DNA of 64,000 nucleotides from Adineta vaga (taxonomy: Eukaryota > Animalia > Rotifera), in NCBI GenBank assembly GCA_021613535.1, contig CP075492.1, positions 20,290,755-20,354,754 of the forward strand, read 5' to 3'. The notes beneath the pieces were generated by a model. It had not been told where the DNA came from, did no database searches, and saw only the letters and a program-made list of their open reading frames with translations. This document shows positions 5,957 through 64,000 of the stretch, in pieces; position 1 is the first letter of the stretch; every line of letters starts with the position of its first letter. The translations under genes were made by a program, and so were the position numbers.

Positions 5957-6228
5957 CGTAATTGAATTTTGTAAATTGCTAAAATCCGTTGACTTTGATT
6001 TTTAAAATAACGTTCCATAATATTACACATGGTTTTTGTTAATTTTTTATGTGTAGGACCATGTATTTGATCACTATTGAATTTTGCCATATCATTATTA
6101 AATTTACTTTCATTTTCATTCATTTGTGCTTCCATTGTTGCTACTTGAACACTTGTTATATCCGAGACAGTTCGTTGTAAAATTTTATCATATCGTTCAA
6201 TTAAACGTTGACGTATTGCTGGATTAGT
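5923..6228 (-). pseudogene. 3' remnant of coiled-coil ORF truncated by telomeric repeats
   Basis: Homologous to the C-terminus of ORF 2342..2584 (ends RFFVKAPT). Abuts CTTGAGGG at 6229. Confidence 0.75.
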
Positions 6229-6230
6229 CT

Positions 6231-6252
6231 TGAGGGTGAGGGTGAGGGTGAG
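6231..6252 (+). repeat. Telomeric-type repeats (TGAGGG)3-TGAG
   Basis: Seen directly. TGAGGG and TGTGGG are bdelloid telomeric repeats. Confidence 0.9.
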
Positions 6253-6387
6253 TTTAAAAGTAATATTTAAACGAGTTCAAAGTTAAACAACCATATCTTC
6301 TGTTCACAGATATCAAAGTATTTAGAACAAATGCAACCACAGTGATATGTCTAAGCAAGTACGAACAACTTGCAAAGAAAGATCATG

Positions 6388-6458
6388 AAATCAAAGCAGG
6401 ACTCGAACCCACATCTTCCGATAAACGGTCGGCTGTTCTACCGTTAAACTATTTGATT
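6388..6458 (-). ncRNA. tRNA-like cloverleaf (GTT at anticodon position)
   Basis: Acceptor stem AATCAAA/TTTGATT, A-box TAGTTTAACGGTAG, B-box GGTTCGAGTCC. Non-canonical C33, T37 and G27.A43. Confidence 0.75.
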
Positions 6459-6790
6459 TTCTCTCCAACTAAGATATTAGTTGCATATCGAACATCTGTT
6501 TAAATATCTAAGATAGTAGGACAATAAAGATATCGATTATTTAAATGAACCCGTAGTGCTGCACGAGAACTTTATCCTAATACGAAGAACCTAATAAGAA
6601 TCATCTGAAGCAGCACAACAGAACTCTCTATTCACAATATTCAAGGGATATCCGAAAGATAATCAAGAATATTAGAACATTAGAGTTACTACTTCAGCAG
6701 TATGAAACCCATAAGTTAATCATTAGGAAATATACGCAGCAAAGTGTTTTCAAAGAAAGGTGAGTTTAAAAGTAATATTTAAACGAGTTC

Positions 6791-7130
6791 TGGGTGTGTT
6801 TGAAAATAGGTATAAAAGGATCAATAGTTAGAAATCTTTCCATTTGTCCACGAATCTATGACTGTCAAGTCATTCAAAGGAAACCACAGCGATATGTTTT
6901 AACAAATACGAACAATTTGTTAAAGAAGATCACTAAATCAAAGCAGGACTCGAACCTACATCTTCCGATAACCGGTCGGCTATTCTACCAATTAAACTAT
7001 TTGATATTCACTTCAGCTCATTAATAGCTACATATCAAGACTCTGAATAAGCATGAACATAGATAGAACAGGACATTAATGGTCAAGTGATTATCTAAGA
7101 TGATTCCTTATTGTTGCACGAGGACTAAAA
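6791..7130 (-). mobile_element. tRNA-mimic retro-unit subtype B, 5'-truncated
   Basis: Starts TGGGTGTGTTTGAAAATAGGTATA, as at 48391. Shared blocks extend to TTGCACGAGGACTA. Confidence 0.7.
6935..7006 (-). ncRNA. tRNA-like cloverleaf (GGT at anticodon position)
   Basis: ATCAAA/TTTGAT stem, TAGTTTAATTGGTAG, GGTTCGAGTCC. Confidence 0.75.
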
Positions 7131-7153
7131 TGATCAAATCAAGTATGTGGAAG

Positions 7154-7480
7154 TACGGGTTCATTTAAATAATCGACATCTTTATTGTTCTAGTATCTTA
7201 TATATTTAAACAAATGTTCGATATGCAACTAATATCTTAGTTGGAGAGAAAATCAAATAGTTTAACGGTAGAACAGCCGACCGTTTATCGGAAGATGTGG
7301 GTTCGAGTCCTGCTTTGATTTCATGATCTTTCTTTGCAAGTTGTTCGTACTTGCTTAGACATATCACTGTGGTTGCATTTGTTCTAAATACTTTGATATC
7401 TGTGAACAGAAGATATGGTTGTTTAACTTTGAACTCGTTTAAATATTACTTTTAAACTCACCCTCACCCTCACCCTCAAG
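7154..7480 (+). mobile_element. Inverted copy of subtype A unit ending in (CTCACC)n-CTCAAG
   Basis: Near-identical reverse complement of ~6229-6555. Confidence 0.85.
7251..7321 (+). ncRNA. tRNA-like cloverleaf (GTT), same sequence as 6388-6458
   Basis: AATCAAATAGTTTAACGGTAGAACAGCCGACCGTTTATCGGAAGATGTGGGTTCGAGTCCTGCTTTGATTT. Confidence 0.75.
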
Positions 7481-8257
7481 ATGACTACTGACAGCACTCA
7501 AACTGATTGTACTCCAAAAGAATCATTGTTAGAAAGTAATAATGATAAAACTTTTAATATGGATCAATCGTTAACGACTGACACTGTTATTGTCAGTCAA
7601 CAATCAATAATCCAATTCAATGCGACAAATATGATTCCAAGTCAAATTCCATCGATGCCAAATCGGATGCAATTAATTTCTTCTCATACTACAGCTCAGT
7701 TAGGCCGACGCCGTCGGCGAAGACGACAACGCCAAAGAAGACAACAACGACAACAACGGCAGCGACGACGACAGCAACACGAAAGACCGCAACAAGGAAG
7801 ACCATCTGAATTAATAAGACTACCACGATACCGACGATGGTCTTCAAGTGACAGTGAGCGTCGCTATTGGGAGGAGATGGGTTTTCCTGAATTCATAGAA
7901 GAGAACCTCACGCCAGTCTTGGAAACCTATTATTGGGAAACAATGGATCCAAACGAAAGACGAGAAGCATGGGAACAAAATCATTTAAACGAGTTACAAC
8001 GAAATACTGCATTAGATCAACAAGATTCTTCAGATTATCTCGAGGCGTTCGCTGTTCTTGAACACTTGCAATTAATAGAAGATGAAATCGAACAAACTCA
8101 TCAAATTGATTCAATTAAACAACTTGAAGCAGAGGAATTACAACGGCGATACAATGCAGAACAGATACAACTCCCGGAATGGCAACAAAATCCGTACGAA
8201 GAATACATTATCGCAGAACATAGCAAGTTAACATATGATGAAATGGAGGAATTATAA
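7481..8257 (+). CDS. Terminon-associated ORF with Arg/Gln-rich basic tract and acidic coiled-coil (probably 5'-truncated)
   Basis: 258-aa ORF starting exactly at the telomeric junction, followed by a 3' region with hammerhead-like motifs and telomeric tails (9171, 9485). Confidence 0.55.
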   Translation: MTTDSTQTDCTPKESLLESNNDKTFNMDQSLTTDTVIVSQQSIIQFNATNMIPSQIPSMPNRMQLISSHTTAQLGRRRRRRRQRQRRQQRQQRQRRRQQHERPQQGRPSELIRLPRYRRWSSSDSERRYWEEMGFPEFIEENLTPVLETYYWETMDPNERREAWEQNHLNELQRNTALDQQDSSDYLEAFAVLEHLQLIEDEIEQTHQIDSIKQLEAEELQRRYNAEQIQLPEWQQNPYEEYIIAEHSKLTYDEMEEL

Positions 8258-28194: not shown

Positions 28195-28239
28195 GCCAAC
28201 TGATGAGACTCTTAGCCGGGTCGAAACACGTGTCTTGGT
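28195..28239 (+). ncRNA. Intact minimal hammerhead ribozyme
   Basis: GCCAA-CTGATGA-GACTC/GGGTC-GAAA-CACGTG-TC-TTGGT; predicted cleavage after 28234. Confidence 0.85.
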
Positions 28240-28246
28240 AGCTGAT

Positions 28247-28353
28247 CTCACCCCACACCCTCACCCCACACCCTCACCCCACACCCTCACCCCTCACCCC
28301 ACACCCTCACCCCACACCCTCACACCCTCACCCTCACCCTCACCCTCACCCAC
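28247..28353 (-). repeat. Mixed telomeric repeats (C-strand on +)
   Basis: CCCTCA/CCCACA units immediately after the hammerhead. Confidence 0.9.
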
Positions 28354-35415: not shown

Positions 35416-35575
35416 TGAGGGTGAGGGTGTGGGTGAGGGTGTGAGGGTGAGGGTGTGGGTGTGGGTGAGGGTGTGGGTTTGGGGTGAGGGTGGGTGTGAG
35501 GGTGAGGGTGTGGGTGAGGGTGTGGGTGTGGGTGAGGGTGTGGGTTTGGGGTGAGGGTGTGAGGGTGTGGGTGAG
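35416..35575 (+). repeat. Mixed TGAGGG/TGTGGG telomeric array (~160 bp)
   Basis: Seen directly; joins the 3' end (TTCTA-CTCAC) of the minus-strand Athena element. Confidence 0.92.
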
Positions 35576-48080: not shown

Positions 48081-48106
48081 TGAGGGTGGGTGAGGGTGTG
48101 GATGTG
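48081..48106 (+). repeat. Telomeric-type repeats at gene truncation
   Basis: TGAGGGTGGGTGAGGGTGTGGATGTG. Confidence 0.85.
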
Positions 48107-48113
48107 TTCCAGC

Positions 48114-48158
48114 AGCCATGACGCGTTTCGAACCCGCTACGGTTCTCATCAGATGGCT
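48114..48158 (-). ncRNA. Intact minimal hammerhead ribozyme in a 216-bp-period unit (partial second copy 48316-48355)
   Basis: Sense AGCCAT-CTGATGA-GAACC/GGTTC-GAAA-CGCG-TC-ATGGCT. Confidence 0.88.
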
Positions 48159-48355
48159 TCTTGTTCAAAAAAGATCAGAATTAAATTAATTTCAACTGGA
48201 AAAAGTCAAAACTAACTTAATTCTATCATTCTTAAACGCAATACACTGTTATAAGTCAATTTTAATGACGAAAAATCAGAAAAACCAACTTATAATGGTA
48301 TTGTTGGCTTGAGCAGTGTGTGTTCCAGCAGCCATGACGCGTTTCGAACCCGCTA

Positions 48356-48398
48356 GAGGGTGGGTGTGGGTGTGGGTGTGGGTGTGGGTGTGGGTGTG
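48356..48398 (+). repeat. (TGTGGG)n telomeric repeats capping the truncated hammerhead copy
   Basis: Seen directly. Confidence 0.9.
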
Positions 48399-49040
48399 TT
48401 TGAAAATAGGTATAGAGATAATCAAATATTAGAAATCTTTTCATTTTGCCCACGAGACTAAAGATTCGAATTTATTTAAAGTATCCACATAGATATGCTT
48501 GAATAAGTACGAGAAACTTATTCGAAAAGATCATTATATCAGAGCAGGACTCGAACCCACATCTTCCGATAACCGGTCGGCTATTCTACCAATTAAACTA
48601 TCTGATGTTCTCTTCTGTTAGTTAATAACAACATATCAAAACTCTGAATAAATCGAGATCGATAGTTCAGGACATAAATGATCAAATGATTAACTAATAA
48701 AGATTCTTATTGTTGCACGAGGACTATAAGAACCTAGTTAAGCAAAATAAGAAACTTCCAATGTAGCAAAACAGAACTCTTAATCCACGACATATAAAAG
48801 ATATTTAAAGAAAATCAAAAGATAATCAAAAGATATCAATGTATATATCACGACAATAGAGTTACTACATTTTCCATATCTTTAATACGAAACTAAGATC
48901 TTTGTTCGCAACAAGGTCGTAACAACGAAGGTGTGTTTGAAAATAGGTATAGAAAGAATCAAATATTAGAAATCTTTTCATTTTGTCCACGAGACTAAAG
49001 ATTCGAATTTATTTAAAGTATCCACATAGATATGCTTGAA
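48394..49040 (-). mobile_element. tRNA-mimic retro-unit subtype B, 537-bp period with ~110-bp terminal redundancy
   Basis: GTGTGTTTGAAAATAGGTATAG... at 48394 and 48931; homologous to 6791-7130. Confidence 0.78.
48536..48607 (-). ncRNA. tRNA-like cloverleaf (GGT)
   Basis: ATCAGA/TCTGAT acceptor stem (compensatory relative to ATCAAA/TTTGAT); A and B boxes intact. Confidence 0.75.
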
Positions 49041-49887
49041 TAAGTACGAGAAACTTATTGATTGTGTGTGGTGTGTTGTATTTCGTTGTGCAAATTGATT
49101 GGTATCAAACGATTCATTCATTCTTGATGTGTTATGGTCCGTGTGAGGTGTGATTGTTCTGTTTCCCCTAATTTGTTCGTGGTCGTTATCTGCCACTTGA
49201 ACTCCTGTTATAAGTTCGCCAATTTTTTGTATTTCCGCCTTTAAATCTTGTACGTTGTTCGTTAAACGGTTCCAATCTTGTTGATTTTCTTCCAATCGAG
49301 ATTTTGTTGTGTCTTGCCATTGACGTGTTTGCGTTTGAATAGCTTCAATCTGGTTTTTCATTGTATTTTGTTGATTTGTTATTTCATTTGATAAATTATT
49401 GGATCCCTCTCTGTTTTCTCCAGTTATGTTCATGTATATTTCGTTTAGTTTCTTTTCTAAATCTGTTAACCGTGTGTTGTTGTTGTTGTTAGCCTCGGAT
49501 AATTTTTGTACAGCTTGTTCAACAGTGACTTTTTCAAAACCTGAAGTTGCTTGGTCCGTATTCATGTTTCTTTTGTCCAATCTATATTGTGTTCTTTATG
49601 TTCAGTAATTCGAGGTTCAAATTGTCAGGGTCGCCATGTAAGGATAAACTTTGTTTGTGGTCAGCAAGTGTCCCTTTATTTATCAATCCTCCTTCCTTTT
49701 ATAGCGATGCTCTCTCCTTTCTCTCTCCAACGAGCACACCAATTAAAAGAGATGAGAAAGGAAGAGAAGAGAAACAGAAGAGCAGAAAGATATCAACGAT
49801 AGATACACATAATGAGAAGATGAACGAGTCTATTCACCCCATAGAAATAAGAAGATAGGTGAACATCAATATATACATATTGTTACA
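49041..49887 (-). mobile_element. 5' fragment of an LTR retrotransposon (LTR 49887-49637, PBS, truncated gag-like ORF from 49580)
   Basis: 251-bp LTR TGTAA...TTACA with TATAAAA and AATAAA, followed immediately by PBS-like TGGCGACCCTGAC and a coiled-coil ORF. Confidence 0.8.
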
Positions 49888-62582: not shown

Positions 62583-64000
62583 TTATACGATAACTATAGA
62601 ATCCAACGAGTATTCCTTTGTTTCACCTAGACCAAACATATTTCGATAGTGACGATACCAATTACTTTGAAAACGTTCTTGTGGATCATAAAGTCGTTTA
62701 AGACGAAGAAATTCAGCAAATTGCGGATAGCAAGTTTCGATCTGTGAACGTGTGGCATATTTATGATAGGTTAAAAAATAACTTCCACCACGTGCAATAG
62801 CCATATCAATTAGACTACGAAACGTGTTAGCGGAATGTTCAATGCCGGCAGGTGTATGAGTGGTATTTATATTGAAAATAGTGCAGGCATAGGGTTGTTT
62901 AGCCCAAGGTAAGAAACTATCAGTATCTGTTTCAATCAACCGAATAGTTCCATAGACCATGTTAACATTATTAGCTCGGAAATATTCTCGAGCTTCGGTT
63001 AGAAAATCGGCCAGAGCAGAACGTGGAACATAAATTTCGGTGATAATTTCGCTGGCTTGTTCTCCTGTACCAAGTCGATGATCAAGTTCATGATGATAAT
63101 CATCAAGATAGATACTTAACTGATGAAGATCAGATGCATAAATTTGACCAGTCGTAGATAAATAATATTCTGTGTACTGTCGAAATGCCATAGCTTTATC
63201 AGCATGAGACAGATAAAAAAGTTCGTTCCAATGAGATTCGGTCAGCTCTTTTTGAACATCAGGTAATGGTGTATTTAAATCAACAGGTCGATAGCAAGAA
63301 AAGACACCTCGATATAAAAAATCATCAGATTTCTCATCGGTAGAAAATTGAAAATCACCGTAAAGAAATCCGTCTTGAATACGTTGTTGAAATGCTTCTT
63401 GTAATTTATCAACTGTAATCAACTCTACAATACGTTCCAATTTTCGTCGAGGTAATAAACGTAATATCACCGAATAAATTACCCCAAACAAACCATAACC
63501 TCCACCAACTAAACCAAACAACTCGACGTTTTCTTCACGACTACATGTAAGAAGTTTACCATCTGCATTAATTAATGTCAATGATTCGACATCAGAAATA
63601 AGAGGTTTCATCTTCAATCCTCGACCATGAGCATTACATGACAATGATCCACCAATAGACAATCGATCTGCACCTGTTTGCTTTTGAGCAATACTCCACT
63701 GTTCCGGCCAAGGGAGATCTTTTTGCGTTTCAACGAGATAATCAATTAATTTTGGCCATTGAATTCCTGCTTCAACTTCAATCAATCCTGTTGTCTTATC
63801 GAATTTCAATACTCGATTCATTTGAATTGTATCGATCAAGATTGTATCCGTACCAAATTGTTGACAACCCATAGCATGTCGACCTCCAGCGATGGAGATT
63901 GATTGATTATGTTCCGCAGCTCTTATAATAGTTTCATGAATAGCATCTGCTGAATCTACTTTGACAATTTCAGCTACCCTTGTATTATTTAATTGAGAAT
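62583..64000 (-). CDS. FAD-binding oxidoreductase (aldonolactone oxidase/DprE1-like), 5' end outside window
   Basis: I.GGRHAMG, SIGGSLSCNAHGRG, GGYGLFGVI, GGSYFLTYH, K..YDP..RFQS motifs; intronless over 1.4 kb. Confidence 0.88.
   Translation of the reverse strand, partial: SQLNNTRVAEIVKVDSADAIHETIIRAAEHNQSISIAGGRHAMGCQQFGTDTILIDTIQMNRVLKFDKTTGLIEVEAGIQWPKLIDYLVETQKDLPWPEQWSIAQKQTGADRLSIGGSLSCNAHGRGLKMKPLISDVESLTLINADGKLLTCSREENVELFGLVGGGYGLFGVIYSVILRLLPRRKLERIVELITVDKLQEAFQQRIQDGFLYGDFQFSTDEKSDDFLYRGVFSCYRPVDLNTPLPDVQKELTESHWNELFYLSHADKAMAFRQYTEYYLSTTGQIYASDLHQLSIYLDDYHHELDHRLGTGEQASEIITEIYVPRSALADFLTEAREYFRANNVNMVYGTIRLIETDTDSFLPWAKQPYACTIFNINTTHTPAGIEHSANTFRSLIDMAIARGGSYFLTYHKYATRSQIETCYPQFAEFLRLKRLYDPQERFQSNWYRHYRNMFGLGETKEYSLDSIVIV

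What the first reader, a model, noticed from the sequence alone, without database searches (positions are those of the whole stretch)
6229..7480. Telomere-tailed non-coding retro-unit that carries a tRNA mimic instead of a hammerhead ribozyme
Seen: four copies (6388-6458 minus, 6935-7006 minus, 7251-7321 plus, 48536-48607 minus) of a 71-72-nt cloverleaf with intact A and B boxes. Each lies about 135 nt upstream of a C-rich telomeric tail, inside a 512/537-bp unit whose 3' end is repeated in tandem. The acceptor stem covaries (ATCAAA/TTTGAT vs ATCAGA/TCTGAT). The anticodon varies (GTT vs GGT) and the loop is non-canonical (C33, T37), so the fold rather than decoding seems selected. I see no CTGANGA/GAAA core in these units, while most other telomere-tailed units here have one. 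Known: Athena/Terminon pLTRs carry hammerheads and attach to telomeric overhangs. Inference: this family uses a tRNA mimic for RNase P/Z processing into monomers, as an internal Pol III promoter, or as an RT-binding handle. That would make it a tRNA-based counterpart of retrozymes/pLTRs; I do not recall a description of this.
Basis: partly seen in the sequence, partly recalled or inferred. Interest (0 to 1): 0.9.

Follow-up and report, generated by a model that had tools for sequence, protein, structure and literature searches.

The report
tRNA-derived cloverleaf in telomere-attaching retroelements
A small non-coding mobile element at rotifer chromosome ends carries a strongly conserved tRNA-shaped segment and shares its 3' end with a reverse-transcriptase-encoding relative, so it most likely hitch-hikes on that relative rather than replacing a ribozyme.

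Summary
Four 71-72 nt cloverleaves (Rfam tRNA 45-52 bits) lie about 135 nt upstream of C-rich telomeric tails, inside 512-537 bp non-coding units with a repeated 3' end and no hammerhead core. Two of the four are arms of one 98% inverted duplication.

The genome looks like Adineta vaga. It holds about 15 full cloverleaves and at least 13 "half" copies. The halves start at tRNA position 30 and end long elements (at least 7 kb) that carry Penelope/Athena-type RT motifs. Those elements also have a hammerhead core about 265 nt upstream of the half.

The cloverleaf is the best-conserved part of the unit (0.86-0.92 identity against 0.50-0.58 elsewhere). It recurs in four metagenome contigs from other bdelloids. 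Its core resembles bacterial-type tRNA-Asn (81%) more than the host tRNA-Asn (63%).

Tails have been exchanged repeatedly between the short units and the RT elements. Covariation in the cloverleaf is weak (2 pairs), but it is strong in the adjacent hairpin (6 of 8 pairs).

Best reading: a non-autonomous, SINE-like partner of an Athena-type element. The tRNA-derived block would be part of the shared 3' handle for the RT. Processing by RNase P/Z and a Pol III promoter for the template RNA both fit the copy anatomy poorly. I rate it a new variant of a known kind. The scan also noted this same stretch in a second reading (s1-502112).

The parts
6229..6252 (-). C-rich telomeric tail, (CCCTCA)n, of unit A, joined to the capped end of the left flank
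6253..6387 (-). 135-nt 3' tail region of unit A, including the covarying hairpin at 6355-6373
6388..6458 (-). cloverleaf 1 (anticodon GTT), tRNA-Asn-derived
6459..6758 (-). 5' body of unit A (non-coding, no hammerhead core)
6759..6790 (-). 32-nt partial copy of the unit-A tail, placed upstream of unit A (pLTR-like partial tandem)
   Evidence: D2
6791..7153 (-). unit B, 5'-truncated, of a different tail subtype; cloverleaf 2 at 6935-7006 (anticodon GGT); very short tail
7154..7480 (+). unit C, an inverted 98% duplicate of the 3' 327 nt of unit A; cloverleaf 3 at 7251-7321; tail at 7457-7480
   Evidence: (I1)
48395..48932 (-). full-length unit (copy 4): 5' body, cloverleaf 4 at 48536-48607, hairpin about 48501-48523, then tail
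48351..48400 (-). (CCCACA)n telomeric tail of copy 4, followed by a 5'-truncated hammerhead-type unit
48933..49055 (-). ~123-nt partial tail copy upstream of copy 4 (pLTR-like)

Best explanation
These are copies of a low-copy family of short (about 520 bp), non-coding retroelements that attach to telomeres. They depend on an Athena-type (endonuclease-lacking, Penelope-like) element for their reverse transcriptase. Both kinds of element end in the same ~205-nt 3' module. It runs from the 3' half of a tRNA-Asn-derived cloverleaf, through a covarying hairpin and conserved GTGGA-type motifs, to a run of reverse-complement telomeric repeats that can pair with the G-rich overhang. The tRNA-derived block is the most constrained part of the module. 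It most likely acts in the RNA as part of the handle by which the RT or its RNP picks the template, at a fixed distance from the priming tail. The short units keep the whole cloverleaf, and the RT-encoding elements keep only its 3' half. Shown here: the anatomy, the shared module, the conservation, the tail exchange and the bacterial-type tRNA-Asn resemblance. Inferred: the role in RT recognition, and the reason the short units retain the full fold (stability, localisation or capture of the RT in trans).
For: The module is shared between short units and long elements (at least 7 kb) with RT motifs of the Penelope/TERT type. On a tree of the tails the full/half label needs 7 changes, at least 4 of them forced by well-supported branches, and one short unit and one RT element have tails separated by zero-length terminal branches. 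Identity along 7 full units is 0.50 in the 5' body, 0.86 and 0.92 in the cloverleaf halves, 0.71 in the hairpin and 0.58 in the rest of the tail. Four metagenome contigs from other bdelloids carry cloverleaf, hairpin and telomeric tail, and two of them also carry the 5' body. 88.5% of cloverleaf pair cells form standard pairs, against 35-49% for slid controls, and most changes are A-U/G-U switches that only preserve pairing on this RNA strand. The hairpin shows compensatory changes in 6 of 8 pairs across 31 sequences. All copies end in 1-8 telomeric repeats, show scattered 5' truncations and partial upstream tail copies, and lie in the outer ~3.5 Mb of contigs.
Against: There is no direct RNA or protein evidence. 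The only laid data were contigs of runs merely guessed to be RNA, and they show no RNA ends. RT elements work with half a cloverleaf, so the full fold is not needed for recognition and its retention in short units is unexplained. Covariation in the cloverleaf is weak (2 pairs). Its predicted folding energy is no better than that of shuffled sequences. The sequence-level conservation, including a perfect B box, could reflect a DNA-level role. The Athena classification of the RT rests on motifs and context, because Pfam and PDB searches gave nothing.
Confidence: 0.55

Rival explanations
1. A classical tRNA-derived SINE: the A and B boxes of the cloverleaf drive Pol III transcription of the RNA that is reverse transcribed.
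For: A-box-like and perfect B-box sequences sit at tRNA spacing. The unit is short and non-coding, and its 3' tail is shared with an autonomous element.
Against: The cloverleaf sits about 325 nt inside the unit, and that upstream part is copied along with it and conserved across species. No copy begins at or just before the cloverleaf. 20 of 28 modules have T4 (11 have T5) within 30 nt after the cloverleaf, and a conserved T4 lies just before the telomeric tail, so Pol III products would usually lack the tail.
Confidence: 0.13
2. One reading: the cloverleaf is an RNase P/Z processing signal that cuts read-through or multimeric transcripts into monomers, taking the place of the hammerhead.
For: The short units lack any hammerhead core. 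The elbow nucleotides (G18 G19, T54 T55 C56) and the acceptor/T-arm helix that RNase P and Z recognise are kept.
Against: Cleavage at the cloverleaf would separate the 5' body from the tail, yet full units retain both, and no copy starts or ends at a cloverleaf edge. RT-encoding relatives have only the 3' half, which cannot form the acceptor stem, and they keep a hammerhead core as well.
Confidence: 0.1
3. A DNA-level role: the B box (with or without the A box) binds TFIIIC and acts as a barrier or positioning element that keeps subtelomeric copies transcribable.
For: The most invariant stretch is the B-box/T-loop sequence. It is conserved in primary sequence in both full and half versions, well beyond what a hairpin needs. 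All copies are subtelomeric.
Against: The conserved block extends well beyond the B box into the anticodon arm and trailer. Substitutions in stems are wobble-compatible on the sense RNA strand. The adjacent hairpin clearly evolves as RNA.
Confidence: 0.07
4. A functionless passenger: a tRNA gene was captured once by template switching and simply carried along.
For: Retroelement RTs do switch templates. The core resembles a real (bacterial-type) tRNA-Asn.
Against: The block is 0.86-0.92 identical where flanks of the same copies are 0.50-0.58. It persists in other bdelloid species and across at least four tail subtypes. The decoding features are lost while the fold features are kept.
Confidence: 0.08

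Closest known systems
tRNA-derived SINEs paired with a LINE through a shared 3' tail (stringent 3'-end recognition)
   Same: Short and non-coding, with a tRNA-derived domain bearing A and B boxes. The 3' end is shared, and repeatedly re-matched, with an RT-encoding partner.
   Different: The partner is Penelope-like/Athena-type, not a LINE. The cloverleaf is internal (about 325 nt from the 5' end) and is followed by T-runs. The boundary of the shared tail lies inside the tRNA-derived domain. Integration is at telomeric repeats, without target-site duplications.
Athena / Terminon 3' ends of bdelloid rotifers (hammerhead followed directly by reverse-complement telomeric repeats; PMC6431247, PMC8557442)
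   Same: Reverse-complement telomeric tail, 5' truncation with telomeric capping, partial tandem (pLTR-like) copies, subtelomeric location, and RT motifs of the Penelope/TERT type in the long relatives.
   Different: There is no hammerhead next to the tail. In the RT-encoding relatives the hammerhead core lies about 470 nt from the tail, and in the short units it is absent. The last ~205 nt instead hold a tRNA-derived block and a covarying hairpin.
Retrozymes and other non-autonomous Penelope-like derivatives (for example MRC1 of Chlamys elements, PMC8557442)
   Same: Non-coding units that rely on a PLE-type RT, form pLTR-like repeats and share 3' sequence with autonomous families.
   Different: Retrozymes are defined by hammerheads in their repeats and by circular RNA. 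No hammerhead is present here, and circles could not be tested.
3'-terminal tRNA-like structures used as replication tags (plant viral TLS, Neurospora Mauriceville retroplasmid; my own knowledge)
   Same: A tRNA-shaped, non-decoding RNA domain near the 3' end of a template copied by a polymerase or RT.
   Different: Here the cloverleaf lies 135 nt from the 3' end and has no CCA terminus. Priming is by pairing of the telomeric tail with the chromosome overhang.

Membership tests
functional tRNA gene | covariance-model score above the Rfam gathering score | tested here: met
   45.2-52.5 bits against a gathering score of 29; host tRNAs score 62-72 bits
functional tRNA gene | canonical anticodon loop (U33, purine 37) and a sound 7-bp acceptor stem | tested here: not met
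   C33 and U37 in all copies; top acceptor pair unpaired in 7 of 19; pair 27-43 unpaired in all
functional tRNA gene | identity with a host isoacceptor (recent capture of a host tRNA) | tested here: not met
   No host tRNA among the 25 best genomic matches. 56% overall and 63% core identity to the host tRNA-Asn, against 81% core identity to a bacterial-type tRNA-Asn
tRNA-derived SINE | tRNA-related head at the 5' end acting as internal Pol III promoter for the whole unit | tested here: not met
   A and B boxes are present, but the cloverleaf starts about 325 nt into the unit, and T4-5 runs follow it in 20 of 28 modules
tRNA-derived SINE | 3' tail shared with an autonomous partner retroelement | tested here: met
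   Each tail subtype occurs on both short units and RT elements; 7 label changes on the tail tree
tRNA-derived SINE | partner is a LINE (non-LTR element) | tested here: not met
   The partner has Penelope/TERT-type RT motifs and a hammerhead core. The LINE near copy L006 is separated from it by a telomeric junction
Athena/Terminon-type element | 3' end of reverse-complement telomeric repeats, 5' truncation, telomeric capping | tested here: met
Athena/Terminon-type element | hammerhead motif immediately upstream of the telomeric tail | tested here: not met
   Absent from the short units; about 470 nt from the tail in the RT-encoding relatives
Athena/Terminon-type element | RT of the endonuclease-lacking Penelope-like clade | tested here: inconclusive
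   Motifs in L030 ORFs fit the PLE/TERT pattern, and an Atlas look-alike cluster is named reverse transcriptase, Rotifera. Pfam and PDB gave no hit. No phylogeny was made
retrozyme | hammerhead ribozymes in the terminal repeats; circular RNA | tested here: not met
   No CTGANGA core and no Rfam ribozyme; circles are not testable with these tools

The most novel reading that the evidence does not exclude
The tRNA-Asn-derived block is the specific RNA tag by which an Athena-type RT, a sister of telomerase RT, selects and positions its template at a fixed distance from the telomere-pairing 3' end. The tag would have come from a horizontally acquired bacterial-type tRNA. This would be a living example of a tRNA-like 'genomic tag' serving a telomere-adding RT, exploited by a dedicated non-coding parasite that keeps the full cloverleaf.
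Probability: 0.25. Interest if true: 0.85.

Novelty: new variant of a known kind. Interest (0 to 1): 0.6.

Why it matters
Penelope-like and Athena RTs are the closest relatives of telomerase RT, yet how they choose their RNA template is unknown. The only 3' signal described so far is a hammerhead placed next to the telomeric tail. This family offers a second, hammerhead-independent 3' module with a sharply delimited, strongly conserved tRNA-derived block. The module is present in an RT-encoding lineage and in a dedicated non-coding hitch-hiker. It gives a concrete, mutable RNA element for testing template recognition by a telomere-attaching RT. It would also be the first SINE-like partner of a Penelope-like element that I could find described. 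The bacterial-type tRNA-Asn resemblance hints that foreign DNA contributed a functional retroelement part in bdelloids.

Tried and rejected
1. Recent capture of a host tRNA: rejected.

2. A known ribozyme hidden in the units: Rfam at E<=10 found none, and there is no CTGANGA core. An alifold pairing of the first four bases of the half with the T-stem never varies, so it carries no evidence.

3. The short unit as the piece of the RT element downstream of its hammerhead: local alignment scored no better than shuffles, and an nhmmer profile of the 5' body found nothing in 15 half-type upstream regions.

4. The LINE (APE plus RVT_1) upstream of copy L006 as partner: it is separated by a telomeric junction and another unit's end.

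5. Thermodynamic support for the cloverleaf: z-scores of -0.2 to -0.7, uninformative.

6. A cloverleaf in the half-type elements: alifold finds only the T-arm hairpin and a mini-hairpin, and Rfam finds no tRNA there except one sub-threshold hit.

7. Expression: no listed run is on record as RNA. The contigs laid cover the tail and the half at depth ~57 in two runs but cannot show ends or strand. Inconclusive.

8. Naming the RT by Pfam or PDB: no hits.

9. The Terminon paper (Arkhipova et al. 2017) could not be read. A mention of this module there cannot be excluded.

10. The right-flank ORF 7481-8257 is not similar to an ORF of the half-type element.

Full report
WHAT IS THERE

The window is the last 64 kb of contig C3 of a 100.8-Mb, six-contig genome. 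Its telomeric repeats are TGTGGG and TGAGGG. With these repeats and Athena-type ends present, it looks like the bdelloid rotifer Adineta vaga.

They score 45-52 bits on RF00005, above the gathering score of 29 but below the 62-72 bits of the host's own tRNAs. Each ends 135-136 nt before a C-rich telomeric tail.

Unit A runs 6758 to 6229 on the minus strand and is preceded by a 32-nt copy of its own tail. Copy 4 runs 48932 to 48395 and is preceded by a ~123-nt copy of its tail. This partial upstream repeat is the pLTR-like arrangement typical of Penelope-like elements.

Copies 1 and 3 are not independent. They are the arms of a 328-nt, 98% inverted repeat that includes the telomeric repeats on both flanks. 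None of the four units has a CTGANGA core on either strand, and Rfam finds no ribozyme at E<=10.

THE FAMILY IN THE GENOME

A BLAST of unit A finds 28 places. A 26-nt T-arm pattern finds 30 places, against 0 for the reversed control. One of those 30 is a host tRNA-Ser.

The 72-nt cloverleaf has 15 full-length copies and at least 10 copies that match only from nucleotide 29-30 onward. No host tRNA is among the 25 best matches. All copies lie in the outer ~3.5 Mb of contigs. All end in one to eight telomeric repeats followed by unrelated DNA.

Full-length units of about 520 bp are few: unit A, copy 4, L006, L008 and L010. The others are 5'-truncated at scattered points, often capped by telomeric repeats.

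THE KEY FINDING: A SHARED 3' MODULE

Aligning 28 copies shows a ~205-nt module common to all. It consists of:
- the 3' half of the cloverleaf, from position 30 in the anticodon stem through the T arm and the 3' acceptor strand;
- a short trailer;
- a hairpin;
- conserved GTGGA-type motifs;
- a short conserved leader before the telomeric repeats.

In 13 or more copies only this module is present, joined to other sequence upstream.

The largest such group (L013, L015-L018, L021, L004/L022) is the 3' end of an element at least 7 kb long. Its ORFs carry RT motifs of the Penelope/TERT pattern: a DVT..Y..IP-type motif A, a G.AMGS...AN.YM-type motif B and YIDD (the classification is from my own knowledge of these motifs). 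A language-model look-alike search places the fragment in a Rotifera cluster named reverse transcriptase. Pfam and PDB searches found nothing.

These long elements also carry a hammerhead core (CTGATGA ... CGAAAC) about 265 nt upstream of the half, which is about 470 nt from the tail. So in the family as a whole the hammerhead and the tRNA-derived block coexist. Only the short units lack the hammerhead.

The half-type elements do not fold into a cloverleaf. Alifold keeps only the T-arm hairpin and a mini-hairpin, and Rfam does not call them tRNA. Their upstream sequences show no significant similarity to the short unit or to each other. By eye they share a short CCAAACATCA-like motif about 10 nt before the junction. 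A single ancient junction followed by divergence is therefore more likely than repeated precise joining. This last point is inference.

SELECTION

Over seven full units (five from the genome, two from the metagenome), mean pairwise identity by region is:
- 5' body: 0.50
- 5' half of the cloverleaf: 0.86
- 3' half of the cloverleaf: 0.92
- trailer: 0.71
- hairpin: 0.71
- rest of the tail: 0.58

Four metagenome contigs (L044-L047), clearly from other bdelloids, carry cloverleaf, hairpin and telomeric tail. Two of them also carry the 5' body with its conserved motifs.

On 19 cloverleaves, 88.5% of pair cells are standard pairs, against 35-49% when the partners are slid. Only two pairs, both in the acceptor stem, show compensatory double changes, and the shuffle control is only marginally exceeded. 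Most variation is A-U/G-U switching, which preserves pairing only on the sense RNA strand.

The tertiary-fold nucleotides are kept (U8, A14, G18 G19, the T54 T55 C56 loop, A58). The anticodon loop, however, has C33 and U37. The predicted folding energy is no better than that of shuffled sequences.

The neighbouring hairpin, by contrast, has compensatory changes in 6 of 8 pairs across 31 sequences. The module therefore evolves as a structured RNA.

ORIGIN OF THE CLOVERLEAF

The host cytosolic tRNA-Asn(GTT) is only 56% identical overall and 63% identical in the core, nucleotides 8-64. The best matches in the phage collection are bacterial-type tRNA-Asn(gtt) genes.

Against one of them, the D arm, anticodon stem, variable region and T arm are nearly the same (81% in the core). 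The acceptor stem has been replaced by an A/U-rich one, and the anticodon loop has changed from the Asn form.

A bacterial-type tRNA-Asn source is therefore plausible. The sequences are short, however, and no donor can be named.

TAIL EXCHANGE

Each of the four or five tail subtypes occurs both on short full-cloverleaf units and on half-type RT elements. On a maximum-likelihood tree of the ~155 nt after the cloverleaf, the full/half label needs 7 changes, at least 4 of them forced by well-supported branches. No bootstrap tree allows a single change. One short unit (L010) and one RT element (L021) have tails separated by zero-length terminal branches.

This is what repeated template switching inside the near-identical conserved block would give. 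It is also the signature of a non-autonomous element that keeps its 3' end matched to its active partner.

MECHANISM

Shown: the RNA 3' end is complementary to the telomeric G strand, and copies sit on telomeric repeats in the orientation expected for priming from a G-rich overhang. This is as described for Athena (PMC6431247, PMC8557442).

Inferred: the conserved tRNA-derived block, with the hairpin, is the part of the 3' module that the RT or its RNP recognises. The short units exploit it in trans.

The copy anatomy argues against a Pol III promoter for the template RNA, and against RNase P/Z trimming:
- The 5' body is copied together with the cloverleaf and is conserved across species.
- No copy starts at a cloverleaf edge.
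- 20 of 28 modules have a T4-5 run within 30 nt after the cloverleaf.

Why the short units keep the whole fold is open. Stability, localisation or access to nascent RT are possibilities.

A DNA-level TFIIIC role for the perfectly conserved B box cannot be excluded.

RNA data were uninformative. No listed run is on record as RNA, and only contigs could be laid.

LITERATURE

Full-text searches and targeted reading found no mention of a tRNA-like element in Athena, Terminons or other Penelope-like elements, nor of SINEs in bdelloids beyond a database count. The primary Terminon paper could not be opened.

VERDICT

It is wrong in presenting the cloverleaf as the hammerhead's substitute.

The best filing is as a new variant of known kinds: a SINE-like, Athena-dependent element whose shared 3' module contains a tRNA-Asn-derived block. 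Interest is moderate to high for retroelement and telomere biology.

Earlier notes of this scan on the same stretch (s1-502112) and on the hairpin (s1-485041) agree with what I measured.

Noticed in passing
window 6228-7481: The whole finding is a palindrome. Two DNA ends, each capped by about 3.5 TGAGGG repeats and the same unit, face each other (328-nt arms, 98%). The right flank ORF 7481-8257 starts with ATG exactly at the junction and is arginine-rich. It resembles the head-to-head telomere seams noted elsewhere in this genome.
   Followed up: partly
L013 about 600-1700; L004/L022: The 3' regions of half-type RT elements also occur as inverted duplications. Hammerhead cores lie on both strands (L013 852-880 minus and 1242-1270 plus). 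The palindrome centre scores as plant MIR1120-like hairpins in Rfam, below the gathering score.
   Followed up: partly
L037 3552-7635 (G000:C5:1825551-1829634): A non-LTR element with an APE endonuclease ORF and an RVT_1 ORF (137 bits) lies upstream of copy L006 but is separated from it by another unit's telomeric end.
   Followed up: yes
window 28200-28348 and 48100-48160: Canonical hammerhead-type ends: a CTGATGA...CGAAAC core followed within ~25 nt by mixed CCCACA/CCCTCA repeats. The strict core pattern finds only these two in the window.
   Followed up: partly
window 35416-35571: A ~155-nt tract of mixed TGTGGG/TGAGGG repeats (the C-rich pattern matches on the minus strand), interrupted every few units.
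   Followed up: no
window 63640-64000: The contig, and so the assembly of this chromosome arm, ends in ordinary sequence without terminal telomeric repeats.
   Followed up: no
L010 341-368, L006/L037 about 2150-2200: Short units are often stacked directly onto the telomeric tail of a hammerhead-type unit. In L037 the preceding unit's core reads TAAA instead of GAAA, so it is probably inactive.
   Followed up: partly
L044-L047 (metagenome contigs Ga0116231_10037517, Ga0116226_10091134, _10265774, _10170033): Environmental contigs that carry the same unit must come from other bdelloid rotifers. They could serve as extra lineages for a covariance model.
   Followed up: partly
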